This document shows, one piece after another, positions 17,731 to 57,288 of a DNA stretch of 64,000 nucleotides. The notes below the pieces were generated by a model. The model was not told the DNA's origin. It made no database searches and worked only from the letters and a program-made list of their open reading frames with translations. The DNA lies in the IMG/VR virus record IMGVR_UViG_3300044972_002389, positions 264,604 through 328,603 of that record; one strand, written 5' to 3'. A program made the position numbers and the translations under genes. How positions within the stretch are numbered: the first letter of the stretch is position 1; each line of letters begins with the position of its first letter.

Positions 17731-17731
17731 C

Positions 17732-18427: not shown

Positions 18428-18441
18428 GAAAGGAAATCAAG

Positions 18442-18624: not shown

Positions 18625-18625
18625 G

Positions 18626-19093: not shown

Positions 19094-19099
19094 CGCACT

Positions 19100-19210
19100 G
19101 AGCCGGGGAAAATTGCCCTGATAACTCCCAGGGCGGGCTCCGTATTGGGACCTTGGAAACAGGGTTAAGGAGGGGTTAATTTGCCCGTTTAGCAGGAACC
19201 TCCGGCCATA
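19100..19210. ncRNA. candidate structured intergenic RNA, class unknown
   Basis: Several GC-rich stems including a GAAA tetraloop hairpin; see findings. Confidence 0.35.
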
Positions 19211-19279
19211 AAACTATTGACACAACCACACACTACAAATACACTACTGATGATATCAATCCACTGAAAGGATATAAAC

Positions 19280-40293: not shown

Positions 40294-40507
40294 ACTGGGT
40301 GCATGGCGAACGCCAGTCAGCAATGAAGAAAATCTTTTGATCAATAAAATAACTGGCAATCAAGGCTCAATAGCCAAAAGTTCTCTTTCGGATAGAGAAA
40401 AAGTGGTAGCAAAAAATCTTGTAGCCCGTGGAGTGTTGACACGAGTTAAACGGGATGATAAACTCTATTATAGCTTTGACGACCCAAGTGATCAATGGAG
40501 AATCTAG
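40280..40507 (+). CDS. hypothetical protein
   Basis: Packed ORF starting MKIIEL. Confidence 0.55.
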   Translation: MKIIELGAWRTPVSNEENLLINKITGNQGSIAKSSLSDREKVVAKNLVARGVLTRVKRDDKLYYSFDDPSDQWRI

Positions 40508-40508
40508 T

Positions 40509-41177
40509 ATGACAGTTAGTAATGAAGACAAAGACGCAATGAGCCGTCTCTTGCAGATTATGAACGGAGAAAAAACTCCACAGAGTCCTCGCTCAGCGCG
40601 CAGTCCAGCCAGTTCTGCTCCCCTAGAACTGGCTGGTGCTGGGCAAGTTACTAGGGCAGATGTTGATGCTATGGCGCAAGTGTTGACGCGCCTAAACAAT
40701 GTTGTAGGTCAAGTGTCAACAGATATCTTGTTGGAAAGTGACAACAATCCTGAGCTAGCACAAGCTCTTGTAACTGAAACAACCTATGCTGGTATCAAAA
40801 TAGGGCGCTATGAAATCAAAATCAATCTAGATGAAACTAGGCTGGTCAACAAACAACATTACAGTGTTGTTAACAAGATTTCTGGTGAAGTTTTGGCTCA
40901 CGAACTAGGCCTTTATGAAGCTGCACATGGCTTGGTAAAAATGCTAAACAGCGGCCTCTATATCAACAGCCAAAGCGTCAGAGATCTTTTGGAAGCGGAA
41001 GCCGCCTATACTAGCCACAAAATGGATGCTATTCGATTCAAGCGCCGTGCCAAAAAGAGTCTGATTGAAGGCAAGGGCCACGATACCAGTCTATTTGAAG
41101 CACGTCGAGTAGCAGCAATGGATAAAGCAATGACAGCTAAAAGTCGTATCAAAAAAATCTACAACAGCTTGCCATGA
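40509..41177 (+). CDS. hypothetical protein
   Basis: SD GGAG; packed. Confidence 0.55.
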   Translation: MTVSNEDKDAMSRLLQIMNGEKTPQSPRSARSPASSAPLELAGAGQVTRADVDAMAQVLTRLNNVVGQVSTDILLESDNNPELAQALVTETTYAGIKIGRYEIKINLDETRLVNKQHYSVVNKISGEVLAHELGLYEAAHGLVKMLNSGLYINSQSVRDLLEAEAAYTSHKMDAIRFKRRAKKSLIEGKGHDTSLFEARRVAAMDKAMTAKSRIKKIYNSLP

Positions 41178-41473
41178 TACTTGTTACAGACCAAGCACAA
41201 ACACAACTGTCCAAAATTCTCCCTCTTGGGGGAAGATTTAGGATTCTCATTGAGAGCGGTGGATGCAGCGGCTTTGAAAAAAAGTTTGAAATCTGCAACG
41301 ATATTCGCCCTGACGATTTTAACTTTGGACATGTATTGATTGACCCACAAAGTCTGGAACTGTTGGGCAACGCCACCTTAGACTATAAGATCAGCTTGGG
41401 GGAACAAAAATTTGTCCTAGACATACCCCAAGCGTCAATTTCCTGCGGATGTGGTAAAAGCTTCAATTTTTGA
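41174..41473 (+). CDS. IscA/HesB-family Fe-S cluster assembly accessory protein
   Basis: GGCSGF, DP.SL..L...TLDY, C-terminal CGCGKSF. Confidence 0.9.
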   Translation: MILVTDQAQTQLSKILPLGGRFRILIESGGCSGFEKKFEICNDIRPDDFNFGHVLIDPQSLELLGNATLDYKISLGEQKFVLDIPQASISCGCGKSFNF

Positions 41474-41516
41474 CAAGAGAACCCATAAATAGATCTAAAC
41501 ATTGGAAGTTTGGATC

Positions 41517-43472: not shown

Positions 43473-43474
43473 GC

Positions 43475-43503
43475 AAAAAGGGAGTTTAAAAACTCCCTTT
43501 TTT
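43475..43503 (+). terminator. intrinsic terminator
   Basis: AAAAAGGGAGTT-TAAA-AACTCCCTTTTTT. Confidence 0.8.
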
Positions 43504-43534
43504 CATCTCCGTCCCCCATTGTTAAATACTGATT

Positions 43535-43867
43535 ATGAGAGCACATGAATTTTTAAATGAAGCCAACAATGTTGATAACATCCGCGAGCAACTTGCGTTG
43601 TTGTTAACTACATTACATGCCAATCAAGTTCCTAGTGTGAGTTTGAAACAAATACGTCAAAGCCTTGAAGGTTCTGGATTTTGGGTTACCAAGAAATGGA
43701 TTCAAGACAATGCTAGGAACATAGGTATTGTCAAAGATGTTGACGAAAAAGAAATCTCCCTTGACGTGGAAACAGACGATCCAGAGCCTGAAGCCAAAGA
43801 TGATCAAGAGGATCAAAAAACTGTAGAGAAAATGGCCAAAAAAGCTTTGCAGAGGAGAAAAGACTAA
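43535..43867 (+). CDS. hypothetical virion protein
   Basis: Starts MRAHEFLNE after TAAATA at 43523. Confidence 0.55.
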   Translation: MRAHEFLNEANNVDNIREQLALLLTTLHANQVPSVSLKQIRQSLEGSGFWVTKKWIQDNARNIGIVKDVDEKEISLDVETDDPEPEAKDDQEDQKTVEKMAKKALQRRKD

Positions 43868-46338
43868 TGGTTACAACTAGTTGGTTTATTACTGCTGTTG
43901 AAGCAAGAAACAATATTGTCAAAGACATTGCAGTTCATAGTGAAATAACAGGTATTGAACGTGAAATACTTTTTGCTGTGCAGCGAGGTGATTACGAAGT
44001 CGACGTTACTGACAATACTTTGATAACAGAAAGCAGTCCTGACCCTGTAATCCCCTTCACTGTTGATCCAGTAACAGATACTCTAACAATCACCTCGCAT
44101 CCATTTCGTACCGGTGATGTTGTGGTAGTGAGCAGCACTGGTGAGTTACCCCCGCCACTGTTGTCTACAAAATATTATTACGTGATTTACATAAACCCAG
44201 ACACTATAAAACTGGCAACTAGCAAAGCCAATGCAGCTAGTGGTCAGCCAATTTCCATAGATTTTGGTCAAGGGGTAACAACAGTTGCAGTCTCGGATCC
44301 TGGCAGTGGATACTTGAGTCCGCCCACAATTGGTTTTGTTGGGGGTCAACCCACTATTCCCGCTACTGCACAAGCCGTCTTACAATCTTCAGGTCCTGTA
44401 GCCATAGTGAGTTTGCTCACAAGTGGCTCTGGTTACACTGATATTCCAAATGCCAGTTTTTTCACTGTGGGCACCGGCGCTGTCCTAGGTCCTTGCACAT
44501 TTAAAGTTGTAAGTGTAACAGTCTTATTTGGGGGCAGTGGCTATAATTTAAATGATCTCATCTATGTAATAGGCGGGACAGGCACAGCATTTATTGCCAA
44601 AGCAACAGGTGTTAATGGTGGTGCAGTAACATCTATTTCCGTTACTAACGCTGGTAATTACAGTGTACTACCAACATTGAGTGGTGCTATTACAAGCTCA
44701 AGTGGCACAGGCTCTGGTTGCCAATTCACACTCAGCATGGGCATATCTAGCATCAGCATTTCCAACGGAGGCATACAGTATGTGAATCCTCCCTTGGTAT
44801 CAATAGGCGGAGGTGGTGGAACAAATGCCACAGCTACGACTCTAATTTCTGGCGGCGCTGTAGTAAATGTTGTAATAACAAATCCAGGAGCTGGGTTTAC
44901 TGGCCAACCCACTGTACAAGCCCTTGCTGGTAGCGGAGCCACTGCATCTGTAAGATTGTTACCAACAACTGTTGCTACAGTTGCCATAACCAACAATGGT
45001 GGTGCAACATATACGAGCGTTCCAAATGTGTCTATACAGGCTCTTGGTAGTGGTGCCACAGTGTTCAGCATAAGCATGCTGACTGTGGGTGCTTTCCTAA
45101 TAAATGCAGGTGTTGGCTATACGCAAGGAGATCAACTCCTAGCAAGTGGCGGGATTGGATTGGCAAGCACACAAATACAAGTGCTCACTACTGACAGCCA
45201 AGGAAGAATTTTAACGTGGAATATAGTCAACCCAGGCATATACACAGCCTTGCCACAATTACAAAGTAACAATTTTGTGGGTGGCAATGGTATAGGTGCA
45301 AGCTGGACATTGACTATGGGCGTGAAATCAGTAACGTTAGCTAGTGGTGGAAGTGGTTATATTACTAGCCCCTTAGTTGTGTTCACAAGCGGTGGTGGTG
45401 CCGGAGCAGCCGGATATGCCACAATCTCTGTGGGTGCAGTTTCCCAAATAATAATTACAGACAATGGTGCCAACTACACTAGTGTTCCTATAGCAACCAT
45501 AAGTGGCGGAAGTGGTGCAACAGCGCAGGCACAGTTGACACCAACTGGGGTAAACACCATTACTGTGGACGATCCAGGTTCAGGTTACGTGACAGCGCCG
45601 GAAGTCACTATAAGCGGTGGCGGTGGCACAGGGGCATTGGCAATTGCTGATCTTATTGGTGATGTTATTGACACCATTACAGTAATTGATCCTGGGTCTG
45701 GATATACAAGTGCACCTAGCGTAACAATTGAAGGTAATGCTGTGGGAACCGCTAATATTATACCCACTACATTACAGAGCATAAGTGTAATTGCCAATGG
45801 CACTGGATATACACATGTGCCTTCAGTAATAGTTGCAGGAGCCGCAACAGCAGTAGCACGCATGGCACCTACAGGTATTTTGAGTGTAGATATTATAAAT
45901 GGTGGCACCAATTATGTTAGTGACCCCTTATTACTTTTGGGTTTTGGTGCCGGCCAAATAGGCACTCCTGTGGCCCCCACCAGCAACACAAATAGAAGTT
46001 TTAGCATTGAGCTGATTCAAGTCTTGGAAAGTGGAGATGAGTATCAGACTATACCATCTGTAACCATAAGTGCACCGGATATCTCCACAGGTATCCTTGC
46101 TGTGGCTGTTGCCTCTCTAGGAAGCGGCACTGGCAATTTTAGTTTAATACAATATGAAGCCAGCCGAGACTATTACAAAGTATGGAAAAATCAAAGTCCC
46201 AGTAGTGAATTACTAGTGCGTCCTATGGCAGATCAAATGAACGCTGTCATCAAATACTTCACAGATTTGGGGTACACTATCAATAGATACACTAACACGT
46301 CAACAGGTGATACAATTAGCTGGAACGTTAAGTGGTAA
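43867..46338 (+). CDS. Gly/Ser/Thr-rich repetitive tail/baseplate protein
   Basis: Many imperfect repeats of V..I.V.(N/D).GSGY.S.P.V.I.GG.G.GATA. Confidence 0.7.
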   Translation: MVTTSWFITAVEARNNIVKDIAVHSEITGIEREILFAVQRGDYEVDVTDNTLITESSPDPVIPFTVDPVTDTLTITSHPFRTGDVVVVSSTGELPPPLLSTKYYYVIYINPDTIKLATSKANAASGQPISIDFGQGVTTVAVSDPGSGYLSPPTIGFVGGQPTIPATAQAVLQSSGPVAIVSLLTSGSGYTDIPNASFFTVGTGAVLGPCTFKVVSVTVLFGGSGYNLNDLIYVIGGTGTAFIAKATGVNGGAVTSISVTNAGNYSVLPTLSGAITSSSGTGSGCQFTLSMGISSISISNGGIQYVNPPLVSIGGGGGTNATATTLISGGAVVNVVITNPGAGFTGQPTVQALAGSGATASVRLLPTTVATVAITNNGGATYTSVPNVSIQALGSGATVFSISMLTVGAFLINAGVGYTQGDQLLASGGIGLASTQIQVLTTDSQGRILTWNIVNPGIYTALPQLQSNNFVGGNGIGASWTLTMGVKSVTLASGGSGYITSPLVVFTSGGGAGAAGYATISVGAVSQIIITDNGANYTSVPIATISGGSGATAQAQLTPTGVNTITVDDPGSGYVTAPEVTISGGGGTGALAIADLIGDVIDTITVIDPGSGYTSAPSVTIEGNAVGTANIIPTTLQSISVIANGTGYTHVPSVIVAGAATAVARMAPTGILSVDIINGGTNYVSDPLLLLGFGAGQIGTPVAPTSNTNRSFSIELIQVLESGDEYQTIPSVTISAPDISTGILAVAVASLGSGTGNFSLIQYEASRDYYKVWKNQSPSSELLVRPMADQMNAVIKYFTDLGYTINRYTNTSTGDTISWNVKW

Positions 46339-46341
46339 CTG

Positions 46342-46839
46342 ATGAGAAGCGACCGTAATCCTTACTTTTTCTTGAAAAAGAGCAAGGACCCTCAGATTCA
46401 GCAACTGTTGAAAGATGCTGAAACCCTTTGTCCGCATGACATCCAAAAAATGAACGTCAAGCCAGATGTAAAAAAGGCCATGATGTTCATTGCTGAGTTT
46501 GGTCAGAAAGACAAAAGCCAACATACCGCAGAGCTTTTGGCTGACAAAATGTCCCAGTCATCTGTTCCAATATCCACTATCTCGAAAGAAATTTGGCAAT
46601 ATCAAGGCTCTACAATTTTTGTAGCTGTAACGCCTACTAGCAGTATTGAAGTACAGCCCAACAGTTATTTCTTAAAAGATCAAGAGAAAATATTCATAAA
46701 TCACAATTGGTTAAGATTACAAATAAGCAGAGAACAAATTTTAGCTAGCAGTGTGTTTCATAGTTTTGGTAGCTTTCAAGATCTTAACTTACTGAAGAAA
46801 GTTCAATTGGAACAGAAATACAGCAGGACATTGCAATAG
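46342..46839 (+). CDS. hypothetical protein
   Basis: 165-aa ORF. Confidence 0.5.
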   Translation: MRSDRNPYFFLKKSKDPQIQQLLKDAETLCPHDIQKMNVKPDVKKAMMFIAEFGQKDKSQHTAELLADKMSQSSVPISTISKEIWQYQGSTIFVAVTPTSSIEVQPNSYFLKDQEKIFINHNWLRLQISREQILASSVFHSFGSFQDLNLLKKVQLEQKYSRTLQ

Positions 46840-46866
46840 AGCATCGCATCGTATAAAGTCACAGTT

Positions 46867-47580
46867 ATGATCCCAGTTGCATCCCTTTTTGATTATGGTC
46901 TCAGTAAGAGAAGTGAAGATAATGGAACGAGACACTATCTAACCCCAGATGGCCACAAAGTGCCTTCAGTAACAACAATCTTAAGCAAAAGCAAGGATAT
47001 GACTCATTTGCTGGAGTGGCGGAAACGAATAGGCGATGCTGCGGCTGACCAAATCACAAAAGAGAGTACTGGGTTGGGCAGTATGATGCATAGTCATCTT
47101 GAGTGTTGGATCAAACAGGAAGAGCGTCCAGGTGGCACAAATGTTGGTCGAGTTATGGCCAAACAGATGGCAGATGTGATTATTGATCAAGGACTGTCAA
47201 ACGTATCAGAAGTTTGGGGTATTGAAGTACCTCTACGGTATGAACAGCTTTGGGCTGGGACTACAGATTTGGTAGGTGTCTACAAAGGGCAGGAAGCTAT
47301 AATGGATTTCAAAACCACCAACAAGCCCAAAAAACTTGACCATGTGCAAGACTACTTTCTGCAACTTACTGCCTACATTATGGCCCACAATCAAACCTTT
47401 GGTACCAATATCCAACAGGGCGTAATATTCATGGTCAGCCGAGATCTTTCGTATCAAGAATTCGTGTTGGAGCCACATCAACTGGAAGAGTATGAAAAAC
47501 TTTGGTTAGACCGGCTGATGATGTATTATGACAAACACCCTATGCCGTCTTTGATCAGCAATGAATCCATTTCTTCTTGA
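46867..47580 (+). CDS. PD-(D/E)XK exonuclease (phage exonuclease, MGME1-like)
   Basis: PSVTTIL, G...H..LE, E, AGTTD, IMDFKT, QL.AY. Confidence 0.85.
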   Translation: MIPVASLFDYGLSKRSEDNGTRHYLTPDGHKVPSVTTILSKSKDMTHLLEWRKRIGDAAADQITKESTGLGSMMHSHLECWIKQEERPGGTNVGRVMAKQMADVIIDQGLSNVSEVWGIEVPLRYEQLWAGTTDLVGVYKGQEAIMDFKTTNKPKKLDHVQDYFLQLTAYIMAHNQTFGTNIQQGVIFMVSRDLSYQEFVLEPHQLEEYEKLWLDRLMMYYDKHPMPSLISNESISS

Positions 47581-48028
47581 TCCCAATAGTAGGCGCTTAT
47601 CTTGGAAACTTCTCAGAGAAAACGTATCTCAGCAGTCTGATCCAATTTCCAAAATAAACTTAGCTCTGACTTTTTGGAAACAAGCTCCTATCGAAAATCC
47701 TTTAATAGACTGGGACAATGCCCAAAAATGGCCCTCACCATGGGAATTGCTACACAACAATCGATTTTGTGAAGGCGCTTTGACTCTTGGTGTAGCCTAC
47801 ACATTGATCTTGAGCAGTCCTGAACATTTTCAGGACTTGTCACTGTTATTGATAACTGATCGAGTGAACCATGTTCAAAAAATTGTTGCCAAAACACATG
47901 GACAGGTCTTGAATTATGGTTGGCTAGACCAGTTACCTGCCTCTGTAATCAGCAGTTGCCAAGTGCATTCTCGATGGTCATTTGATGGCCGCAATTGGCA
48001 AAGCCAATTTAGTCCTGAAAAAAAATAG
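47561..48028 (+). CDS. hypothetical protein
   Basis: 155-aa ORF, WPSPWELL motif. Confidence 0.55.
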   Translation: MNPFLLDPNSRRLSWKLLRENVSQQSDPISKINLALTFWKQAPIENPLIDWDNAQKWPSPWELLHNNRFCEGALTLGVAYTLILSSPEHFQDLSLLLITDRVNHVQKIVAKTHGQVLNYGWLDQLPASVISSCQVHSRWSFDGRNWQSQFSPEKK

Positions 48029-48137
48029 TAATTTATAGGGTTTGGGCAGGGGTCATGGATTTAAATAGCCCACGATGCCATTTACAATAGCATTTATAAT
48101 CTTGCAAACAATTTGAAATAGACTGGAAAGGTATGCC

Positions 48138-50441
48138 ATGAGCGTAAGGTCCGACAGCATTTTTGTCGTTAAAAGAGATGGTCACAAAGAGCCTCTTGAT
48201 ATTGATAAGATCCATCGACAAGTGATGTGGGCCACAGAGGGGCTCAGTGGAGTAAGTGCCAGCGAGGTGGAAATTCGGAGTCAATTGCAGTTTTATGCAG
48301 GAATGAAAACTGTAGATATTCAGGAAACGCTAATCAAAGCAGCAGCTGATCTCATTGAATTGGAGACCCCTAACTATCAATTTGTTGCTGCACGATTGGT
48401 AAATCATCATATCAGAAAAGAAGCATATGGGAAGTTTGAAACACCGCTATTACTGGAACATGTTCGAAAAGTAGTGAATCTGGGATTTTATACCGATGAA
48501 TTACTACAATGGTACACCCCAGATGAATTCCAAGTTTTGGATACTTACATTGACCATGAGCGTGATTTTGATCTCACATTTGCTGCAATGGAACAGTGGC
48601 GGGGAAAGTATTTGGTGAAGAACCGTGTCACCGGGCAAATCTTCGAAACTCCACAAATGTCTTTGATGCTGATTGCAGCTACGTTGTTTCACAGCTACCC
48701 AGCTAACGCAAGGATGAAGTATGTAAAAGAATACTACGATGCCATCAGTCAGCACGACATCAGCTTGCCCACGCCTATTATGGCTGGTGTGCGAACTCCT
48801 GACAAGCAATTCTCGTCTTGTGTTTTGATTGAAGCTGATGACACCATTGACAGCGTCTTAGGTGCCGTACCACATGCTATCACCCGTTACATAAGCCAAA
48901 AGGCTGGAATCGGTGTTAACATTGGTCGTGTGCGGGGTGTTGGTAGCCCGGTACGTGGCGGCCGTGCATTTCATACAGGAATAGTGCCATTTGTGAAACA
49001 TCTTGAGTCAGCTGTGCGCAGTTGTAGTCAAGGTGGTGTGAGAGGGGGGGCAGCTACAGTGTTTTTCCAGTTTTGGCACTTTGAGTTTGAGGACATGGTG
49101 GTGCTGAAAAACAACAAAGGTACAGATAAAAATCGCGCTCGTCATTTGGACTATTGTGTTCAGTTCAACAAGCTGGCCTACGAACGATTGATTCAAGGTG
49201 GCGATCTCACACTGTTCAGTCCCAGCGATGTACCTGGGCTGTATGAAGCGTTCTTTGCTGATCAAGATCAGTTCAAAATATTGTACGAGCAGTATGAGCA
49301 GGATCCCACAATCCGGAAGAAAACTATCAAGGCTATTGACCTCTTTACACAGTTCATGAATGAGCGGAAGAACACAGGCCGGATCTACTTCATGAACGTA
49401 GACCACGTGAACTCGCATGGTCCTTACAAACCAGAGGTTGCCCCAGTTAGACAATCCAATCTTTGCCTAGAAATACTTCAGACCACCACACCTCTCCAGG
49501 ATATTCACAGCGAAGATCCCAGCATCAGCCTCTGCACACTCAGTGCTATCAACTGGGGACGTATCCGCGAACCCAAGGATTTTGAACGCCCGTGCCGCTT
49601 GGCTGTGCGAGCTCTAGATGCGCTTCTTGACTACCAGCTGTATCCAGTGCGTGGTGCCGAAAACAACTGCCGCCAGTATCGCAACTTGGGCGTAGGCATC
49701 ATCAACTTGGCCTATTGGTTGGCCCGAATGGGATTGCGCTACAGCGATGACAGTGCTCTTTCTGCCATTGATGAATATTGCGAGGCATGGAGCTACTATA
49801 TGATTCGGGCCAGTGTTGACTTGGCCAAAGAAAGAGGAGCATGCCCTGGTTTTGCCGATCTCAAATACAGTGATGGCGTGTTCCCACACGAAACACGCAA
49901 AGCAGACGTAGACCAATTGGTGCCACATCAAGAGCGGTTTCCTTGGAGCAAGCTGCGTGAAGACCTGCAACAGTATGGCATCCGCAATGCCACACTGATG
50001 GCCTGCATGCCCAGCGAGGCCAGCAGCCTAATCAGCAACGCCACCAATGGTATTGAACCTCCTCGAGACTTGATCAGCATTAAACAAAACAAGGATTTTG
50101 TGGTGAAGCAAGTGGTCCCGGAGTCTCGGCGCCTCAAAAATCGCTACGAACTCTTGTGGGATCAGAAAAGTCCAGAAGGCTACATCAAAATTTGTGCTAT
50201 TATTAACAAGTGGATTGATCAAAGTGTCAGTCTAAACACCAGCTACAACCCCAACTTTTATCCTGAGCGTCAACTGCCTATGAGTGAACTGCTTCGTCAT
50301 CAGATTCTCATGTATAAATTGGGTATTCGAACTGGTTACTACTTTAACACACTAGATGGCCAACAAGAAGTAGACAGCGATCAAATGATAGCAGACAACG
50401 CAGATCAAGAAGAAGAAGCTTGTGAGGCGTGCACCATCTAA
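48138..50441 (+). CDS. nrdA: ribonucleotide reductase class Ia alpha subunit
   Basis: ATP cone VVKRDG, PTPIMAG, FSSC, SNLCLEI, TGYY, C-terminal CEAC. Confidence 0.97.
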   Translation: MSVRSDSIFVVKRDGHKEPLDIDKIHRQVMWATEGLSGVSASEVEIRSQLQFYAGMKTVDIQETLIKAAADLIELETPNYQFVAARLVNHHIRKEAYGKFETPLLLEHVRKVVNLGFYTDELLQWYTPDEFQVLDTYIDHERDFDLTFAAMEQWRGKYLVKNRVTGQIFETPQMSLMLIAATLFHSYPANARMKYVKEYYDAISQHDISLPTPIMAGVRTPDKQFSSCVLIEADDTIDSVLGAVPHAITRYISQKAGIGVNIGRVRGVGSPVRGGRAFHTGIVPFVKHLESAVRSCSQGGVRGGAATVFFQFWHFEFEDMVVLKNNKGTDKNRARHLDYCVQFNKLAYERLIQGGDLTLFSPSDVPGLYEAFFADQDQFKILYEQYEQDPTIRKKTIKAIDLFTQFMNERKNTGRIYFMNVDHVNSHGPYKPEVAPVRQSNLCLEILQTTTPLQDIHSEDPSISLCTLSAINWGRIREPKDFERPCRLAVRALDALLDYQLYPVRGAENNCRQYRNLGVGIINLAYWLARMGLRYSDDSALSAIDEYCEAWSYYMIRASVDLAKERGACPGFADLKYSDGVFPHETRKADVDQLVPHQERFPWSKLREDLQQYGIRNATLMACMPSEASSLISNATNGIEPPRDLISIKQNKDFVVKQVVPESRRLKNRYELLWDQKSPEGYIKICAIINKWIDQSVSLNTSYNPNFYPERQLPMSELLRHQILMYKLGIRTGYYFNTLDGQQEVDSDQMIADNADQEEEACEACTI

Positions 50442-50505
50442 GGTGCATGCTCTTGCTATACGTATCCCCTAGCACATAATAGTCAAAAACTGAGAGAAGA
50501 ACACC

Positions 50506-51642
50506 GTGGCATACCATACACTAGACAGCAGCACTAACAACAAAGATCATGTGAAATCCCTTGCATTCTTGGATGACAGCGGTACTACTACAGTAGCGCG
50601 GTATGATCGCATGAAATACAGAGTATTTGATCGTTTGACTGAAGAACAACTCAGCTTTTTTTGGCGTCCCCAGGAGATCGAGCTTAACAAGGATGCTAAC
50701 GACTTTCGAAAGCTAACTGCACATGAGCAGCATATCTTCACAGCAAATTTAAAACGACAAATTGTGCTTGACAGCGTACAGGGACGAGCACCCAACACAG
50801 CATTCCTGCCCCTTTGCAGTCTGCCTGAACTGGAAATTTGGATCCAAACTTGGGCATTCAGTGAGACTATCCACAGTAAAAGCTACACGCACATCATCCG
50901 CAACATCTACAGTGATCCCAGCAAGGTTCTTGATGAGCTGATGAACATTCAGGAGATTGCAGATTGTGCACGAGATATTACTCAGCACTATGACAATCTC
51001 ATCAACTACACTATGCAATACCATGTGCTGGGTGAAGGAGTGCATAGTGTAAATGGGCAAACAATCACAATCAGCAAGCGAGAACTGAAAAAGCGCATTT
51101 GGATGGCACTGAACAGTGTGAATGCACTAGAAGGTGTGCGTTTTTATGTTTCATTTGCTTGCAGTTTTGCATTTGCCGAACTTAAAAAGATGGAAGGCAA
51201 TGCTAAAATCATCAAGCTGATTTGCCGTGATGAAAACCTACATCTAGGCAGCACACAAACTCTCATCAAACTGTTGCCAAAAGACGATCCAGAGTTTGCT
51301 GATATTCGTGATGAAATGGCCCTAGAGTGCCAACAGCTATTTGAGTCAGCAGTGGCACAGGAAATTGCATGGGCAGACTACTTGTTCAAAGACGGCAGCA
51401 TGATTGGTTTAAATGCACCACTTTTGAAGGACTATGTTGAATACATAGCAGGAACTCGTATGGAAAGCATTGGTATTCCCAGCACTTTTGGGCGGCGCCC
51501 CAATCCATTGCCGTGGACACAAAAGTGGATCAGCGGAAAAGAAGTTCAAGTGAGCCCACAAGAAGTTGAGCTGTCAAGCTATCGTATTGGAGATGCAAAG
51601 ATGGACGTAACAGACAAGACATTCTCCGGGATGACTCTATAA
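50506..51642 (+). CDS. nrdB: ribonucleotide reductase class Ia beta subunit
   Basis: FFWRPQE, DSVQGR, ETIHSKSY, LEGVRFYVSF, DENLH. Confidence 0.97.
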   Translation: MAYHTLDSSTNNKDHVKSLAFLDDSGTTTVARYDRMKYRVFDRLTEEQLSFFWRPQEIELNKDANDFRKLTAHEQHIFTANLKRQIVLDSVQGRAPNTAFLPLCSLPELEIWIQTWAFSETIHSKSYTHIIRNIYSDPSKVLDELMNIQEIADCARDITQHYDNLINYTMQYHVLGEGVHSVNGQTITISKRELKKRIWMALNSVNALEGVRFYVSFACSFAFAELKKMEGNAKIIKLICRDENLHLGSTQTLIKLLPKDDPEFADIRDEMALECQQLFESAVAQEIAWADYLFKDGSMIGLNAPLLKDYVEYIAGTRMESIGIPSTFGRRPNPLPWTQKWISGKEVQVSPQEVELSSYRIGDAKMDVTDKTFSGMTL

Positions 51643-51711
51643 TCAGACACCCAACGTTTTGACACGACGTTGGGTGATCAGGTATATTACAAGAAATACC
51701 AAAGGAAACCT

Positions 51712-51993
51712 ATGATGCAAGCAGAGATTTGGAGCAAACATTTTTGCCCCTATTGTGACCGGGCCAAAGACCTACTCAAGAGTTTGAATATTCCTTACCA
51801 GGAATATATCATCAGCCCTGGATACGATGAAGCACCTGCTGCAACCAATCAACAATATGTTACCAAGGCTGAGCTGTTGCAGAAGTTGCCAAGTGCCAAA
51901 ACTGTGCCTCAAATCTGGATCGACAGCGTGCATATTGGCGGTTATACTGATCTAGAGACAAAAGTCAAAGCTGGCAGCATATCTCCACAATAA
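51712..51993 (+). CDS. glutaredoxin
   Basis: CPYC, TVPQI, IGGY. Confidence 0.92.
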   Translation: MMQAEIWSKHFCPYCDRAKDLLKSLNIPYQEYIISPGYDEAPAATNQQYVTKAELLQKLPSAKTVPQIWIDSVHIGGYTDLETKVKAGSISPQ

Positions 51994-52039
51994 CCTCCTG
52001 GATTTCTCCTTTAAATAATCAAAAAGGAGAACATCAAAT

Positions 52040-52876
52040 ATGGCCGGTGAGCAAGACGGGTATGTGGACTTCAATGACAGAACAACCCCTAATGAAATAG
52101 CGAGTGTGCAAATTCGAACCGAACCTCCCCCACGGACTGAGCCTGCATTTGAAAGTTTTGTAAGGCGTATTGAAAGCTATGCAAGGGAGCCAGCAGTGGT
52201 AGCTATGAATGATGCTATCCAAGCTGCACAAGCCGCCGCAGCAAACAATCCGGATGCACAGCAGGCATTACAACAGAGCTTGGGTCCCGTACAAAATGTT
52301 GGCCTAATAGGCGGGTTCGGGGCTCTGTTGGCAAGTCATAGAGACAGAATTGTGGATGACGGTACTCGAATATTTCGGGCAATAAATGACTTTTTTCAAC
52401 CAGGTAGAGCACAAGATCCCAGTAGGTGTGCTACTGTTGGTGATTACATAGGAACCATACAAGGCCGATACAACGACACATTGGGATCTATTACTAGTGC
52501 TATAGGCCAATTTGTAGGAGCTCTTGTAAGTATCCCTGCACGCATAATTGGGGCTATAACCTCTGCCATTTCTGGCTTGATTGGGGCAATTGTGGGTGGC
52601 ATTTCTGCTGTTGTACAAGCTGCTGCTGGAGTTGTAAGTAGTGCTGTGGGAGTACTCACTGGCGCCATAAGTGGGGTCAGTAGCTTGCTAGGCACCATTG
52701 GCGCTGGTATAAGCCAAGTTACAGGAGCAGTAGCTCGCGAAACACAAAATATCACAACAGCATTAACATCTGGATTTGCATCTGGATTCAGTCGCAGTGT
52801 TTCAGGAGTGAATCCCTGTGTAGCCGCAGCACAACAGGGTTCACCTGTGGCACAATTTGGCACACCACCAACCTAA
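52040..52876 (+). CDS. Gly/Ala-rich hypothetical (probable virion) protein
   Basis: Late promoter at 52012; amphipathic small-residue repeats. Confidence 0.55.
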   Translation: MAGEQDGYVDFNDRTTPNEIASVQIRTEPPPRTEPAFESFVRRIESYAREPAVVAMNDAIQAAQAAAANNPDAQQALQQSLGPVQNVGLIGGFGALLASHRDRIVDDGTRIFRAINDFFQPGRAQDPSRCATVGDYIGTIQGRYNDTLGSITSAIGQFVGALVSIPARIIGAITSAISGLIGAIVGGISAVVQAAAGVVSSAVGVLTGAISGVSSLLGTIGAGISQVTGAVARETQNITTALTSGFASGFSRSVSGVNPCVAAAQQGSPVAQFGTPPT

Positions 52877-52879
52877 TGG

Positions 52880-52907
52880 TTGACAACTGAAGAATCCCCG
52901 ATATACT
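52880..52907 (+). promoter_or_regulatory. sigma70-type promoter for the tmRNA
   Basis: TTGACA-N16-TATACT. Confidence 0.7.
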
Positions 52908-52912
52908 AGGAA

Positions 52913-53180
52913 GTGATGCTGTTGATAGCAGCCAAATAAGTTGTGCAAGACCTGGGGGCAGCACCCAGCATCTCCAGAATTTGGGGATGAAGCAGGATTC
53001 GATTGCAAACAGTAAGGGTTGAAGGAGGCATTCGGTGAGATATGGCCGCCCAGAGATGGGAACAGTTCTAAACGTAAAAATGCTAACGACAACAACGTTG
53101 CATTTGAGTCTACCGGTCTAATAGCCGCATAGTCTCAGCGGGAGGGCAACCCTCCTTGGAACAGAAGCGGTTGCACTTTT
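52913..53180 (+). ncRNA. ssrA: two-piece (circularly permuted) tmRNA
   Basis: T-arm CTGGG-GGCAGCA-CCCAG plus acceptor 3' strand CATCTCCA (to 52976) precede the 5' strand GGGGATG (52983), giving a G3.U70 pair; tag frame 53082-53132 encodes ANDNNVAFESTGLIAA*. Outer ends approximate. Confidence 0.92.
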
Positions 53181-53193
53181 AAAAGGAATTACA

Positions 53194-53880
53194 ATGAACA
53201 CACTTGCTGCCGACTCCAGTTATGACGCCGGACTTCGAACGTTCATGCTGGGCATCTACAATCGAATGACAGCCGCCTTGGTTGTAACAGGAGCTACAGC
53301 TTGGCTGGTATCTAAATTTTTTGCCACTCTCATGACAGGATGGACAGGCATTGGCCTTATGCTCTTGCCCTTGGCATTTGTGTTGGTATTGAGTTTTGGT
53401 ATTGAACGACTCAGATACAGCACAGCCAATCTCCTGTTTTGGCTATTTTCTGCCAGCATGGGCTTGAGCATGAGCACAATTTTCCTCACGTTCACTGGCA
53501 CTAGTATTGCCACTGTGTTTTTCATTACCAGTGCCACTTTTGGTGCTGCCAGTGTGTATGGTTATGCTACCTCACGTGACTTAACAAGCATGGGTTCTTT
53601 CTTGATGGTGGGCCTAATTGGCGTATTGATAGCCAGTGTTGTGAACATTTGGCTAGCCAGTTCAATCTTGACCTTTGTTGTGAGCATTATTGGTGTTATT
53701 GTGTTTGTGGGGCTCACGGCTTACGACACACAAAACTTGAAGAATGATTACTACAGCAATGGTGAAGTGTTTGGATTGGACAGTCCAGCCAAAAGCAGTT
53801 TGTATGGGGCACTAAGTCTCTACTTGAACTTCATCAACATCTTTCAGCTGCTCCTCAACTTGATTGGTGATCGAGAATAA
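53194..53880 (+). CDS. Bax inhibitor-1/YccA-family membrane protein
   Basis: Seven TM segments; DAGLR.FM..IY..M, T.RDLT.MGSFL, LTAYDTQ, GALSLYLNFINIF. Confidence 0.9.
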   Translation: MNTLAADSSYDAGLRTFMLGIYNRMTAALVVTGATAWLVSKFFATLMTGWTGIGLMLLPLAFVLVLSFGIERLRYSTANLLFWLFSASMGLSMSTIFLTFTGTSIATVFFITSATFGAASVYGYATSRDLTSMGSFLMVGLIGVLIASVVNIWLASSILTFVVSIIGVIVFVGLTAYDTQNLKNDYYSNGEVFGLDSPAKSSLYGALSLYLNFINIFQLLLNLIGDRE

Positions 53881-53902
53881 CAGTATCAACAATTTGAGAT
53901 TT

Positions 53903-53939
53903 AAAAAGGGCAGGAATAATATTCCTGCCCTTTTGTTTT
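53903..53939 (+). terminator. intrinsic terminator
   Basis: AAAAAGGGCAGGAAT-AAT-ATTCCTGCCCTTTTTG. Confidence 0.8.
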
Positions 53940-53993
53940 GACCCAACAAAAACACTACATATAATCACACTACAATTTTTGAGTACAGAGAAC

Positions 53994-55871
53994 ATGAGCA
54001 ACAACGATATCAGGAAGCTAAGCGACGGAGACCATATCAGATTACGCACTGAAATGTATTTGGGCAGCAGAAGCCCGCATACACAAACTGTCATCAACTG
54101 GACTGGCAAAAAACTGGAAGCACAAGAAGTCACATGGACACCAGCCATGTATTGCGCTTTTCGCGAGATATTTGATAATGCTCTAGATGAGGTAATTGGT
54201 CACAGCTCTGGATCCCGTATTGACGTTTCTTACGATGAAACAGCAGGCAGCTTCAGTGTGAAAGATGATGGGCGTGGTATTCCCATTGACTGGGATGAAA
54301 GTGAAAACATGCACAAAGCCACTATGGTGCTGGTGTATCCACGTGCTGGACGTAATTTTGGCGAACGTGGGGAAGTCCGAGGCACAAATGGTATTGGCAG
54401 CTCGGCTACAATCCATTGCTGTGAAACCAGTACAGTAACCGTGTATCGGGACGGCAGCAAGTTTACACAAACATTTTCCGAACCCAATGCTGTGTTCAAA
54501 GACTTACAAGTAAGTGATCCCAAAATCATCAAAAGCGCAGCCAAGTCTGGCACAGAGTTGACTTTCACTCTCAGCAAGGGTGTGTTCAAACATCGCATCC
54601 TGCCCACAAGTTTTGTTCAATCTCGAGTGTATGAGGTGGCAGCCAATCATCCCACTGTTAAATTCACATTCAATGGTGAAAAAGTGGTTGTCAAAAACAC
54701 TGTGGAGAAAACATTTTTCTCAGATTCCAACTTCATCAAAATCACCTCGGAAGCAGACAATTTTCTCAGCACATTTTTCCTTGTGCCAAATTTTCAAACT
54801 GAGGGTGAGTTTGTTCACAGCACAGTAAATGATATTCCTGCGTTCAACGGTGGGCACCACATAGATGTGTTCAAACGTGTATTTTTCTCCAATCTTCTCA
54901 AAAGCTTAGAGAAAGAAAGTCGTAGGCGGGCACTCACACCCAACAGAAGCGACATTCAAGAAGGCATCCTGGTCTACAATATTACGCAGATGCACGCTCC
55001 TAACTTTGATAGCCAAAACAAAACAAGACTAATCAATGAGGACGTGGAGTCATACATTCGCACAGCCTTGGATGACGACAAGCTGTACAAGAGGATTCAA
55101 AAGGATCACAAAGAATGGATTGATCAAATCTATGCCCGTTGTGCAGCTCGTACTCAGAAAAAAGATGATGCTGAAACAGCCAAGCTGGCACGAAAAGTGC
55201 TGCGCACCAAAGTGCCCAAGCTAATGGATGCCACAGGAAAAGATCGAACCAAATGCATCTTGTTGATTACAGAAGGTGATTCAGCAGTTAGCAGTGTGGC
55301 AGCGGTGCGTGATCCAGATGTGCATGGTGGCCTGCCTTTGCGGGGCAAGATCCTAAATGTGAGAGGTGAGAGCAACAAAACAGTGTTGGACAACAGTGTG
55401 CTACAAGACATCATGAGCAGCATTGGGCTAACACTGGGACAAAAATGTGTTCGTGACAACTTGAGGTATGGGCAAGTGTGGATCACTTGTGACAGTGACA
55501 CAGATGGCGCCAACATTATGGCTCTTTTGGTTAACTTCTTTTATCTGCACTGGTCAGAATTGTTTGATCCTCAGCAACAACCATTTTTCCTTGTGTTCTC
55601 AACACCATTTATTATTCAAGAGGACAAGAAAAAGAACCGACACTACTGGTACAGTGACGACCACACCAATTACAATGGACGTGACTGGGAAGGTTGTCCC
55701 AAGCCCACTAGGGCAAAGGGCCTGGGCAGTTTGGAAGAAGTTGACTGGCGCAACAGTTTGTTGAAGCCCAGGCTTGTGCCTTTGACTGATGATGGCAAAC
55801 TTGATGGGACTCTTGACCTCTTGTTCAATCACACAAAAGCTGATCTCAGAAAACAATGGATGGAAATTTAA
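53994..55871 (+). CDS. type II topoisomerase ATPase/TOPRIM subunit (GyrB/gp39+60-like)
   Basis: EIFDNALDE, DDGRGIP, G.NGIG, TEGDSA, PLRGK, D.DTDG, KGLGS. Confidence 0.93.
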   Translation: MSNNDIRKLSDGDHIRLRTEMYLGSRSPHTQTVINWTGKKLEAQEVTWTPAMYCAFREIFDNALDEVIGHSSGSRIDVSYDETAGSFSVKDDGRGIPIDWDESENMHKATMVLVYPRAGRNFGERGEVRGTNGIGSSATIHCCETSTVTVYRDGSKFTQTFSEPNAVFKDLQVSDPKIIKSAAKSGTELTFTLSKGVFKHRILPTSFVQSRVYEVAANHPTVKFTFNGEKVVVKNTVEKTFFSDSNFIKITSEADNFLSTFFLVPNFQTEGEFVHSTVNDIPAFNGGHHIDVFKRVFFSNLLKSLEKESRRRALTPNRSDIQEGILVYNITQMHAPNFDSQNKTRLINEDVESYIRTALDDDKLYKRIQKDHKEWIDQIYARCAARTQKKDDAETAKLARKVLRTKVPKLMDATGKDRTKCILLITEGDSAVSSVAAVRDPDVHGGLPLRGKILNVRGESNKTVLDNSVLQDIMSSIGLTLGQKCVRDNLRYGQVWITCDSDTDGANIMALLVNFFYLHWSELFDPQQQPFFLVFSTPFIIQEDKKKNRHYWYSDDHTNYNGRDWEGCPKPTRAKGLGSLEEVDWRNSLLKPRLVPLTDDGKLDGTLDLLFNHTKADLRKQWMEI

Positions 55872-55872
55872 C

Positions 55873-57288
55873 ATGAAGAAGTCTCGAGCAGGAACATCAA
55901 CTACCCCTGTGACACCAGACATTGTGGACATTGGCGGGCAAACAAGCGCCTTCATCAACACAAGCTCCAAAGAATATGCCATCTACACTGCCCAAAACCG
56001 GGCTATTCCCAGCATTTGTGATGGTTTGAAGGATGGACAACGTAAGATGCTGTGGTTGATGAGAAGCAAAAGTGAGAAGGTCAAGACCATCAGCCTTGCC
56101 GGTTCTGCGATTCAAGAAGGGCTGTTTCTTCACGGAGACGTTAGTGCTGCTGAAACCATCAGTAGACTGGCAGCACCGTATCTGAACAATGTTCCATTGT
56201 TTGATGGCATTGGTGCATTTGGCACCCGAGTTGGTCCAGACAGTTGGGGTGCACCTCGATACACTTATGTAAAACGTGGTCGGGCTGCTGACGCATTGCT
56301 CTACACTGACCTTGACATTGTGCCATTGAAGCCCAATTATGATGGCAGCACTCTGGAACCAGTGAACTTTCTGCCACTTGTGCCATTGGTGCTGCTAAAT
56401 GGTGTGAGCGGTATTGCTGTGGGCTGGAGTACAGAGATCTTGCCCCACAGCTTGGAAAACCTAGTGGCTGCAACTGTGGCTGCTATTGACAAAAAACCAT
56501 TGCCCGCACTACTGCCCAGCTTTGATTATCTCAATGTAGGTGTCAATTCTCTTGGCAATAACAGCTATGAGTTCACCGGAAAGGTCAAGATTGAAGGCAG
56601 CACAGTGGTACGGGTAACTGAGTTGCCGCCTGATCTCAGCCTTGAAAAGTTCAAAGCTCGACTAAATCAAATGGAAGATGACGGCAGCATCACCACCTAC
56701 ATTGACCGCAGTACCAAAACAATTGACGTAGAAATCAGATTCAAAAGAGGTTCGATTGAAGGCTGGGATGAAGACAAATTCATTGGATTTTTGAAACTCA
56801 AAAGCAAGACAACACAGCGATTGGTTGTTCTAGACTTCAACGGCGCCAGCATCCGCCAATATCCCAATCCTGAGTCGCTAGTGCAAGCATTTGTGGAGTG
56901 GAGACTAAGTTGGTATGCCAAGCGTTATGAAAAACAAATTGCTGATCTCACACGAGAACTGAACTTTGCCAAAGCTATCAAACTCTGTGTTGAGGGTGGC
57001 TTGCCCAAATTCTTGCCCTTGGCCCAAAATCGTGCTGAAGTGCAAGCTAGAGTTGAAAAACTGGTCAAAGGCGTTTGCCTAGACGAAGACCAACTGGATC
57101 GAATTGTAGGCCTTCCCAGCTATCGATGGTCCAAGGACAGTGTTGAGAAGATTATTGAAGACATTGCACGCTTGACCCTTGAAATTGATGCACTGCAACA
57201 GTTGCTCAAAGATCCCAAAAAGATTCGCGACAATTACAAAAAAGAGACTCAAGCTCTTTTGAAATCTTTGCCTCGCAACAAATCATAA
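55873..57288 (+). CDS. type II topoisomerase breakage-reunion subunit (GyrA/gp52-like)
   Basis: RAIP...DGLK.GQRK, HGD, APRY catalytic Tyr, NG.SGIAVGWST. Confidence 0.93.
   Translation: MKKSRAGTSTTPVTPDIVDIGGQTSAFINTSSKEYAIYTAQNRAIPSICDGLKDGQRKMLWLMRSKSEKVKTISLAGSAIQEGLFLHGDVSAAETISRLAAPYLNNVPLFDGIGAFGTRVGPDSWGAPRYTYVKRGRAADALLYTDLDIVPLKPNYDGSTLEPVNFLPLVPLVLLNGVSGIAVGWSTEILPHSLENLVAATVAAIDKKPLPALLPSFDYLNVGVNSLGNNSYEFTGKVKIEGSTVVRVTELPPDLSLEKFKARLNQMEDDGSITTYIDRSTKTIDVEIRFKRGSIEGWDEDKFIGFLKLKSKTTQRLVVLDFNGASIRQYPNPESLVQAFVEWRLSWYAKRYEKQIADLTRELNFAKAIKLCVEGGLPKFLPLAQNRAEVQARVEKLVKGVCLDEDQLDRIVGLPSYRWSKDSVEKIIEDIARLTLEIDALQQLLKDPKKIRDNYKKETQALLKSLPRNKS

What the first reader, a model, noticed from the sequence alone, without database searches (positions are those of the whole stretch)
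52880..53180. Phage-encoded circularly permuted tmRNA with only a 6-nt intervening segment
Seen: a promoter, then the acceptor piece (T-loop GGCAGCA, ending CATCTCCA at 52976, CCA not encoded), then GAATTT, then the coding piece starting GGGGATG with tag ANDNNVAFESTGLIAA. TTGCA-AAC after the D-loop region pairs with GTTG-TGCAA in the acceptor piece. Established: permuted two-piece tmRNA with a GGCRGUA-like T loop is typical of alphaproteobacteria, and a terminal AA is a ClpXP degron. Inference: the phage supplies its own ribosome rescue. The very short linker raises the question of how RNase P and 3' processing occur. No smpB is present in this window.
Basis: partly seen in the sequence, partly recalled or inferred. 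Interest (0 to 1): 0.7.

Follow-up and report, generated by a model that had tools for sequence, protein, structure and literature searches.

The report
Phage two-piece tmRNA lacking CCA
A lake-water jumbo phage carries a genuine circularly permuted (two-piece) tmRNA gene of a known kind; its very short linker is common among such genes, and only the missing CCA end and a recently diverged tRNA-like domain are unusual.

Summary
Window 52913-53177 (+) is a permuted alpha-type tmRNA gene; both Rfam models score above their gathering cut-offs. It has a 7-bp acceptor stem with G3:U70, a discriminator A at 52976, six nucleotides (GAATTT) and then G1 at 52983. CCA is not encoded, and the tag reads ANDNNVAFESTGLIAA. 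The window lies in a 328.6-kb lake-water jumbo phage related to Agrobacterium phage Atu_ph07 and Sinorhizobium phage Phosso.

The supposed oddity is ordinary. Phage two-piece tmRNAs are already published. Linkers of 5-12 nt occur in 108 viral contigs and at least 115 bacterial species scanned here, and 19 other loci have 6 nt or fewer.

Lack of CCA is rare (7 of 224 short-linker genes) but known. A 98.2%-identical sister phage and a more distant one carry CCAAAC at the same spot. The window's allele differs at 22 positions within 79 nt (tRNA-like domain plus linker), yet every base pair is kept.

The likely route is RNase P cleavage, 3' trimming and CCA addition. The phage encodes an atypical nucleotidyltransferase. 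It has no tRNA genes and no SmpB. Then come charging with alanine and use of host SmpB.

No RNA evidence exists for this allele. This is a new member of a known kind, of modest interest.

The parts
52880..52907 (+). Sigma-70-type promoter TTGACA-16-TATACT. The transcription start is inferred near 52913-52915.
   Evidence: 11 of 12 consensus matches. Both hexamers are identical in sister phage L370, and a TTGACA...TATCAT version is present in L373. The RF01849 model's 5' region aligns its UAUAUU to this -10 element.
52913..52976 (+). Acceptor piece: the 5' strands of the P2 helices, the T arm, the acceptor 3' strand and discriminator A52976. Its 5' end is inferred from the promoter.
52952..52968 (+). 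T arm: a 5-bp stem CUGGG/CCCAG with the 7-nt loop GGCAGCA, a variant of the alpha-type GGCRGUA loop.
   Evidence: The pairs are counted.
52977..52982 (+). Intervening sequence GAATTT, with no CCA. In the folded precursor, A52976 can pair with U52982 to give an 8-bp hairpin with a 5-nt loop.
   Evidence: The sister alleles read CCAAAC at this position.
52983..53177 (+). Coding piece: the acceptor 5' strand GGGGAUG (52983-52989), the D-loop analogue, the 3' strands of the P2 helices, a hairpin at 53033-53048, the tag frame and a 3' hairpin. Its 3' end is taken from the RF01849 alignment and is inferred.
53082..53132 (+). Tag reading frame: resume codon GCU, 16 codons and a TAG stop, giving ANDNNVAFESTGLIAA.
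   Evidence: It is identical in L370. L373 encodes ANDNNVALALAA.
52931..53009 (+). Divergence patch covering the tRNA-like domain and linker. It has 22 differences from the 98.2%-identical sister phage L370, and all helices are kept.
53194..53880 (+). Bax1-I/YccA-like membrane protein gene directly downstream. No terminator lies between it and the tmRNA, so co-transcription is likely.
   Evidence: PF01027, 8.9e-53; weak match to the YccA FtsH modulator; no terminator. The pairing is conserved in L370 and L373.

Best explanation
This is a working two-piece (circularly permuted) alpha-type tmRNA gene of a freshwater jumbo phage.

Shown here: a strong promoter at 52880-52907 precedes the gene. 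The gene order is acceptor piece, 6-nt linker, coding piece. The tRNA-like domain is intact, with a 7-bp acceptor stem carrying G3:U70, discriminator A, a 5-bp T stem, and three long-range helices joining the two pieces. The tag frame is open and ends in Ile-Ala-Ala.

Inferred, in order:
1. The precursor folds, and host RNase P cuts 5' of G52983. U at position -1 is a favourable leader nucleotide.
2. This leaves the acceptor piece with the trailer GAAUUU. The trailer is removed by host 3' exonucleases or RNase Z down to A52976.
3. A CCA-adding enzyme builds the CCA end. This could be the host's enzyme, or the phage's own 284-aa class-II nucleotidyltransferase at G000:C1:245698-246552.
4. Alanyl-tRNA synthetase charges the RNA through G3:U70.
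5. Host SmpB and EF-Tu deliver it to stalled ribosomes.
6. The tag ANDNNVAFESTGLIAA is added, and host proteases (ClpXP-type) degrade the product.

The RNA is probably transcribed together with the downstream Bax1-I/YccA-like gene.

The window's allele (no CCA, canonical T arm) is a recent derivative of the CCAAAC allele found in sister phages.
For: - Both Rfam permuted-tmRNA models score above their gathering cut-offs.
- All parts can be read directly in the sequence.
- All 29 base pairs of the tRNA-like domain are paired in all three related phage alleles. Two pairs show compensatory changes and four show one-sided changes that keep the pair. Controls with slid partners give 30-50% paired.
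- The promoter matches the consensus and is conserved.
- The tag frame is conserved in frame across relatives.
- The allele is fixed and unchanged in contigs from several lake metagenome runs dated 2020-2024.
- Short linkers are common in cellular and viral permuted tmRNA genes, including cultured Devosia and Nitrospirillum isolates, so such precursors must be processable.
- CCA-less short-linker tmRNA genes exist in six bacterial genomes. CCA-less tRNA genes exist in the kin phages.
- The phage encodes a PolyA_pol-family nucleotidyltransferase whose nearest solved relatives are CCA-adding enzymes.
- Phage two-piece tmRNAs are documented (PMC9004378).
- The tmRNA database paper states that the CCA position does not always encode CCA (PMC11915505).
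Against: - There is no RNA evidence for this allele. The only metatranscriptome contigs found belong to the L373-like allele, and they span the junction, so they show neither cleavage nor its absence.
- Only one phage lineage carries this allele.
- The phage nucleotidyltransferase reads DDPNQ where CCA-adding enzymes have the base-selecting EDxxR motif. It scores below the NCBIfam equivalog cut-offs, so its activity is unknown.
- The host, and hence its RNase P, RNase Z and SmpB, is unknown.
- ARAGORN does not call the gene.
- Since the coding piece is identical to L370's, nothing shows that selection has acted since CCA was lost.
Confidence: 0.72

Rival explanations
1. The window's allele is a recently disabled copy. 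Loss of the encoded CCA in a 6-nt linker prevents efficient 3' maturation, so the RNA is made but poorly charged. The gene is on its way to decay.
For: CCA is encoded in 217 of 224 short-linker genes, which argues for selection to keep it. The allele is confined to one lineage. There is no RNA evidence.
Against: The 22 changes keep every helix, and the resulting T arm is more canonical than the sister allele's. The promoter, G3:U70 and the tag frame are intact. Six bacterial genomes carry CCA-less short-linker tmRNA genes. The allele persists unchanged in runs from 2020 to 2024.
Confidence: 0.13
2. The RNA acts mainly as a decoy. It would be an uncharged or uncleaved tRNA-like domain that binds host SmpB and dampens host trans-translation during infection. 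This is what was proposed for the TLD-only tmRNA of mycobacteriophage DS6A.
For: The literature reports that a TLD-only molecule, chargeable or not, inhibits tmRNA, perhaps by titrating SmpB (PMC4131195). This allele lacks CCA, and the phage has no SmpB.
Against: A full coding piece with a conserved, in-frame tag ending in Ala-Ala is retained. Sister alleles do encode CCA. Nothing here distinguishes a decoy from a normal tmRNA.
Confidence: 0.08
3. The locus is not phage-encoded. It would be host (alphaproteobacterial) DNA wrongly joined into a viral record, or a prophage-att fragment of a host ssrA gene.
For: Fragments of ssrA occur in prophages because ssrA is a common integration site (PMC9004378).
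Against: The gene is complete, not a fragment. It sits between ribonucleotide reductase and glutaredoxin on one side and T4-type topoisomerase II genes on the other, near virion genes, in a 328.6-kb virus record. The same arrangement occurs in two other viral contigs. No close cellular tmRNA was found in 401 sampled alphaproteobacterial species.
Confidence: 0.03
4. The region is protein-coding or a chance match. An example is the 84-aa minus-strand ORF at 52841-53095.
For: A mechanical ORF of 84 aa overlaps the region on the minus strand.
Against: Two covariance models score above gathering. The three alleles differ by single-base insertions and deletions that would break any frame, while all RNA pairs are kept.
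Confidence: 0.01

Closest known systems
Alphaproteobacterial two-piece tmRNA (Rfam RF01849 alpha_tmRNA and RF04321 tmRNA_permuted; prototype Caulobacter, Keiler, Shapiro and Williams 2000, as cited in PMC9004378 and PMC3978253)
   Same: Same gene order (acceptor piece, intervening sequence, coding piece). Same GGCRGUA-type T loop, G3:U70, discriminator A, long-range helices joining the pieces, a tag beginning ANDN, and a hydrophobic-Ala-Ala end.
   Different: It is carried by a phage. CCA is not encoded. The T loop reads GGCAGCA. The tag is long (16 aa) and ends IAA. No close cellular relative was found in 401 sampled species.
Phage-encoded two-piece tmRNAs of marine myophages (Melnitz and pelagimyophages; PMC9004378)
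   Same: An alpha-type permuted ssrA in a lytic T4-like phage, placed behind an early-type promoter and directly upstream of a protein gene in the same unit, with no phage SmpB.
   Different: The phage lineage differs (a freshwater jumbo phage of the Atu_ph07/Phosso group). No glutamine riboswitch was detected in the window. There is no encoded CCA.
Permuted tmRNA of Sinorhizobium jumbo phage Phosso (PV764938, 349596-350198)
   Same: Phosso is one of the two closest cultured kin by topoisomerase II (53% aa identity). It has an alpha-type permuted tmRNA scoring 113 bits, and a tag beginning ANDN.
   Different: Phosso encodes CCA and has 413 nt between the discriminator and G1, the opposite extreme. 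Its genomic position is different. Atu_ph07 has no tmRNA.
Short-linker permuted tmRNA genes of bacteria (for example Devosia pacifica and Nitrospirillum with CCA+4; several MAGs with CCA+2; CCA-less CCTTGC in two alphaproteobacterial MAG chromosomes)
   Same: The distance from discriminator to G1 is 5-7 nt, so the acceptor arm of the precursor is a closed hairpin loop.
   Different: Almost all of them encode CCA. The window's linker has no C at all.
Circularly permuted tRNA genes of Cyanidioschyzon, green algae and Thermofilum (PMC3978253)
   Same: The 3' and 5' acceptor strands are joined by an 'acceptor loop' of 1-74 nt. [quoted passage not shown]
   Different: Those RNAs are re-ligated into one piece through a circular intermediate. 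tmRNA stays in two pieces.

Membership tests
Permuted (two-piece) tmRNA, alpha type | Covariance-model score at or above the curated gathering threshold | tested here: met
   RF04321 72.9 bits (gathering 47); RF01849 64.6 bits (gathering 50); both are full-length matches.
Permuted (two-piece) tmRNA, alpha type | Permuted gene order: acceptor (3') piece upstream, intervening sequence, coding (5') piece downstream | tested here: met
   52913-52976, 52977-52982 and 52983-53177.
Permuted (two-piece) tmRNA, alpha type | 7-bp acceptor stem with the G3:U70 alanine identity pair and discriminator A | tested here: met
   GGGGAUG pairs with CAUCUCC, the third pair is G:U, and A52976 follows. All 7 pairs are kept in three alleles.
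Permuted (two-piece) tmRNA, alpha type | T arm with a 5-bp stem and the alpha-type 7-nt loop GGCRGUA | tested here: met
   CUGGG/GGCAGCA/CCCAG. The loop differs at one position (C for U), a variant also seen in viral locus L180.
Permuted (two-piece) tmRNA, alpha type | Long-range helices that hold the two pieces together | tested here: met
   Three helices of 8, 4 and 5 bp are 100% paired in three alleles, with compensatory changes.
Permuted (two-piece) tmRNA, alpha type | Tag reading frame that starts at an Ala resume codon and ends in hydrophobic-Ala-Ala plus a stop | tested here: met
   GCU...AUA GCC GCA UAG at 53082-53132, giving ANDNNVAFESTGLIAA.
Permuted (two-piece) tmRNA, alpha type | Encoded 3' CCA after the discriminator (usual but not obligatory; PMC11915505 Fig. 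1 legend) | tested here: not met
   GAATTT follows A52976. CCA is absent in only 7 of 224 short-linker genes, a count that includes this one and its duplicate contig.
Permuted (two-piece) tmRNA, alpha type | Cleavage into two RNAs, 3' CCA, alanylation | not testable with these tools
   No RNA run holds this allele.
Permuted (two-piece) tmRNA, alpha type | Dedicated partner protein SmpB available | tested here: not met
   No PF01668 match in the 328.6-kb record (77% complete), nor in Phosso, Atu_ph07 or L370's contig. SmpB must come from the host, as for other phage tmRNAs.
Phage-encoded gene (as opposed to a host gene) | Embedded among phage genes in a virus genome, with synteny in related phages | tested here: met
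   Flanked by ribonucleotide reductase, glutaredoxin, T4-type topoisomerase II and virion proteins. The record is classed as a virus. The same order is seen in L370 and L373.
CCA-adding enzyme (class II nucleotidyltransferase), for the phage's 284-aa protein | Head-domain motif A (GGxVRD) and the base-selecting motif D (EDxxR) | tested here: inconclusive
   PF01743 at 85 bits. Best PDB matches are CCA-adding enzymes (4x4w, 1.3e-25). Motif A is GGAVRD, but the motif D position reads DDPNQ. Scores are far below the NCBIfam equivalog cut-offs.

The most novel reading that the evidence does not exclude
The window's allele could be a recent, selected replacement of the tRNA-like domain that removed the encoded CCA. 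Maturation and charging of the phage tmRNA would then depend on a CCA-adding activity. That activity might be the phage's own atypical 284-aa nucleotidyltransferase, in a 328.6-kb record with no tRNA gene at all. The phage would thereby control when its tagging RNA becomes active. Alternatively, the RNA would serve as an SmpB decoy until it is matured.
Probability: 0.1. Interest if true: 0.6.

Novelty: new member of a known kind. Interest (0 to 1): 0.3.

Why it matters
The finding adds a freshwater jumbo-phage lineage to the phages known to carry alpha-type two-piece tmRNA. It also shows that such genes can do without an encoded CCA even when only six nucleotides separate the two acceptor strands.

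The more useful by-products are general:
- Closed 'acceptor loops' of 5-12 nt are common in permuted tmRNA genes of bacteria and phages. RNase P and 3' processing of such loops is therefore routine biology that has not been examined biochemically.
- Two phages that are 98% identical carry sharply different tRNA-like domains. They offer a natural pair for testing what CCA, linker sequence and T-arm geometry contribute to tmRNA maturation.

None of this overturns current understanding.

Tried and rejected
- **ARAGORN** on the window, the whole 328.6-kb record and excerpts found nothing. I rejected this as evidence because ARAGORN calls only about 65% (217 of 335) of comparable permuted genes, regardless of linker length, and also misses Phosso's gene. 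The 'own 1' printed was my parsing error: the program's final summary line was counted as a hit. One search corrected it.
- **Megablast** of 50000-56000 against cultured phages gave no match.
- **Search for a donor** of the diverged tRNA-like domain found none. I tried blastn-short against all fetched loci, an exact-pattern scan of viral contigs that returned only the duplicate contig L215, and BLAST against 401 alphaproteobacterial species that gave only short conserved-element matches.
- **Host identification** from tmRNA similarity failed.
- **Pattern scan** CATCTCCANNNNNNGGGGATGAA in metagenomes returned mostly chance hits. Only L370, L373 and L473 were real relatives.
- **RNA evidence**: 13 RNA runs held 8-12% of the sampled words. 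The two that could be laid carry the L373-like allele, not this one.
- **Phage-encoded ClpP, ClpX and IF3** (the last two present in Atu_ph07 and Phosso) were not found in this record.
- **Assembly chimera as the cause of L370's different patch**: judged unlikely. It would require two strain switches within 79 nt, with only about 18 nt of shared sequence on the left side. It is not formally excluded.
- **Founding papers** PMC516066 and PMC16621 are not held in the library. The tmRNA database supplements held as text carry no intervening-sequence lengths.

Full report
**What is there**

- A near-consensus promoter, TTGACA-16-TATACT, lies at 52880-52907.
- The acceptor piece follows. Its T arm is CTGGG/GGCAGCA/CCCAG (52952-52968). 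Its acceptor 3' strand is CATCTCC (52969-52975), followed by discriminator A at 52976.
- Six nucleotides, GAATTT (52977-52982), come next.
- The coding piece starts with GGGGATG (52983-52989). The two 7-nt strands pair, with G:U at the third position, which is the alanine identity pair.
- The tag frame runs from GCT at 53082 to TAG at 53130-53132 and reads ANDNNVAFESTGLIAA.

Rfam gives full-length matches above gathering for tmRNA_permuted (72.9 bits against 47) and alpha_tmRNA (64.6 against 50).

ARAGORN reports nothing. On 335 comparable permuted genes it finds about 65%, independent of linker length, and it also misses the gene of phage Phosso. Its silence is therefore not informative. In one search my script counted ARAGORN's closing summary line as a hit for the window's gene. 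One search shows that ARAGORN really misses it.

**Context**

The window is bases 264604-328603 of a 328,603-bp IMG/VR virus record, which is linear and estimated at 77% complete.

Around the tmRNA lie:
- ribonucleotide reductase large and small subunits and a glutaredoxin;
- a 278-aa protein with weak tape-measure-like matches;
- a Bax1-I/YccA-like membrane protein;
- the two T4-type topoisomerase II subunits;
- an 823-aa virion protein.

By topoisomerase II, the nearest cultured phages are Sinorhizobium phage Phosso and Agrobacterium phage Atu_ph07, jumbo phages of Rhizobiales, at 53% identity. The DNA recurs in at least 20 lake-water metagenome runs. The gene is therefore phage-encoded, and an alphaproteobacterial host is likely but not identified.

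The whole record holds:
- no SmpB;
- no tRNA gene by either ARAGORN or the Rfam tRNA model;
- no ClpP;
- no homologue of the ClpX and IF3 genes of Atu_ph07.

Phosso, whose genome is complete and carries a tmRNA, also lacks SmpB. These phage tmRNAs must therefore use host SmpB.

**Is the short linker unusual? No.**

Phage two-piece tmRNAs are already described. PMC9004378 reports 53 two-piece forms among 133 unique phage tmRNAs. The 2025 tmRNA database lists 79 phage sequences and notes that the CCA position does not always encode CCA (PMC11915505).

I scanned viral contigs for the alpha-type T arm plus acceptor strand. The result list was cut at 120 rows. In those rows plus Phosso's gene, 118 genes have a recognisable 5' strand, lying 7 to 413 nt after the discriminator. 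Nine of them are at 12 nt or less, and in every case the interval starts with CCA.

A second scan, restricted to 0-12 nt, found 108 viral loci and, before its own cut-off, 115 bacterial species. In these:
- five nucleotides (CCA plus two) occur in 3 viral and 5 bacterial loci;
- six nucleotides occur in 2 viral and 9 bacterial loci;
- cultured isolates such as Devosia pacifica and two Nitrospirillum strains have CCA plus four.

A closed acceptor loop of this size is therefore ordinary for permuted tmRNA genes. The same question was raised for permuted tRNA genes, whose intervening sequences range from 1 to 74 nt (PMC3978253).

What is rare is the missing CCA. Among 224 short-linker genes, only 7 lack it: the window, its duplicate contig L215, and six bacterial loci.

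**The junction is real**

L215, from another IMG/VR contig, is 100% identical over 9,259 bp. Contigs of four lake-water DNA runs cover 52700-53400 without a single difference.

**Relatives and a diverged tRNA-like domain**

Metatranscriptome contigs of two freshwater runs match 52999-53104 with seven differences. Upstream they read CATCTCC-A-CCAAAC-GGGGATG.

A pattern scan then recovered two viral relatives:
- L370 is a 49-kb contig that is 98.2% identical to window 40319-54668 and fully syntenic.
- L373 is about 76% identical in the flanking genes.

Both relatives have CCAAAC where the window has GAATTT: the same six-nucleotide spacing, but CCA plus three.

Against L370 the window shows 255 differences in 14.35 kb. 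Of these, 22 fall within 52931-53009, the region of the P2 helices, T arm, linker and D-loop analogue. None falls between 53010 and about 53500.

L370 and L373 are identical to each other across this domain. By parsimony, the window's allele is the derived one.

I found no donor sequence. Whether the patch arose by recombination with an unsampled tmRNA gene or by rapid change remains open.

All 29 pairs of the five helices are paired in all three alleles. Two pairs show changes on both sides and four show one-sided changes that keep the pair. Sliding the partners gives only 30-50% paired. With three sequences this is weak as statistics. It does show that the burst of substitutions respected the fold.

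The window's T arm is the canonical one. The sister allele has an extra base pair, or equivalently a 9-nt loop. Rfam scores of the three alleles are similar.

**How it most likely works**

Shown:
- the promoter;
- an intact tRNA-like domain with the AlaRS identity pair;
- an open tag frame;
- no terminator before the Bax1-I gene.

Inferred:
1. RNase P cuts 5' of G52983. In the folded precursor, A52976 can pair with U52982, leaving a 5-nt loop.
2. The GAAUUU trailer is trimmed back to A52976.
3. CCA is added.
4. The RNA is alanylated.
5. With host SmpB, the RNA tags stalled nascent chains for proteolysis.

CCA addition is routine in bacteria whose tRNA genes lack CCA (general knowledge). In the kin phages a minority of tRNA genes also lack it: 1 of 13 in Phosso's cluster and about 3 of 9 in Atu_ph07's.

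The phage encodes a 284-aa PolyA_pol-family nucleotidyltransferase at G000:C1:245698-246552. Its best solved relatives are CCA-adding enzymes (4x4w, E = 1.3e-25), and it has motif A, GGAVRD. In place of the base-selecting EDxxR motif it reads DDPNQ, and it falls far below the NCBIfam equivalog cut-offs. It may act on the tmRNA, but this is a lead, not a finding.

**Rivals**

- A recently disabled allele (0.13) and an SmpB decoy in the manner of phage DS6A's TLD-only RNA (0.08; PMC4131195) cannot be excluded without RNA data.
- Host contamination (0.03) is contradicted by context and synteny.
- A protein-coding or chance origin (0.01) is contradicted by the frame-breaking indels between alleles.

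**Verdict**

The finding is real and correctly identified, but it belongs to a known kind. The short linker is common. The missing CCA and the diverged tRNA-like domain are modest, testable peculiarities.

Noticed in passing
window 52931-53009 compared with L370:1470-1815(-) and L373:4925-5265: Two phages that are 98.2% identical differ at 22 of 79 positions in the tmRNA's tRNA-like domain and linker, yet are identical for the next ~500 nt. The more distant L373 shares L370's version exactly. The cause may be allele replacement or recombination inside an RNA gene; no donor was found.
   Followed up: partly
L370 and L373 (alignment A1, columns 98-116): The sister allele's T arm is non-canonical: CGGGAG/GGCAGUG/CUUCCG, which is a 6-bp stem or a 5-bp stem with a 9-nt loop. 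Even so, this allele (L373-like) is the one seen in freshwater metatranscriptome contigs, and those contigs span the CCAAAC junction.
   Followed up: partly
G000:C1 whole record; nucleotidyltransferase at G000:C1:245698-246552 (-), outside the window: The 328.6-kb record has no tRNA gene by two detectors, although its cultured kin carry more than 20. It does encode a short class-II nucleotidyltransferase with DDPNQ in place of the EDxxR motif. The record is only 77% complete, so a tRNA cluster may lie in the missing part.
   Followed up: partly
window 53194-53880 (+): A Bax1-I/YccA-like membrane protein gene lies 17 nt after the tmRNA's modelled 3' end, with no terminator between them. The pairing is conserved in L370 (97% aa identity) and L373 (90%) but is not seen beside bacterial tmRNA genes, apart from one Acidocella MAG about 2.4 kb away. 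YccA is an FtsH modulator in E. coli; any link to the degradation of tagged proteins is speculation.
   Followed up: partly
window 52000-52400 (278-aa ORF at 52040-52876) and 42200-42600: These are hot spots of divergence from sister phage L370: 82 and 50 differences respectively, out of 255 in 14.35 kb. The first lies in a protein with weak tape-measure-like matches directly upstream of the tmRNA promoter.
   Followed up: no
viral loci L103, L115, L074, L063, L028, L128, L055, L064 (intervening sequences of 160-270 nt): Long intervening sequences of viral permuted tmRNA genes often contain an ORF of 40-75 aa, several with a Shine-Dalgarno-like motif. L103 and L115 share a homologous small hydrophobic protein. 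These would be protein genes nested in the part excised from the tmRNA precursor.
   Followed up: partly
L004:1501-2103 (-) = Sinorhizobium phage Phosso PV764938 349596-350198: Phosso has a strong permuted tmRNA (113 bits; tag ANDNVSTKVALAA) with 413 nt between the discriminator and G1. ARAGORN misses it. Atu_ph07 has none.
   Followed up: partly
window 14000-20000: This block has 50-54% G+C in a window that otherwise has 39-47%. It encodes SprT-like, AAA_33 kinase-like and PspA/IM30-like proteins next to a non-specific endonuclease. It may be a foreign insert.
   Followed up: no
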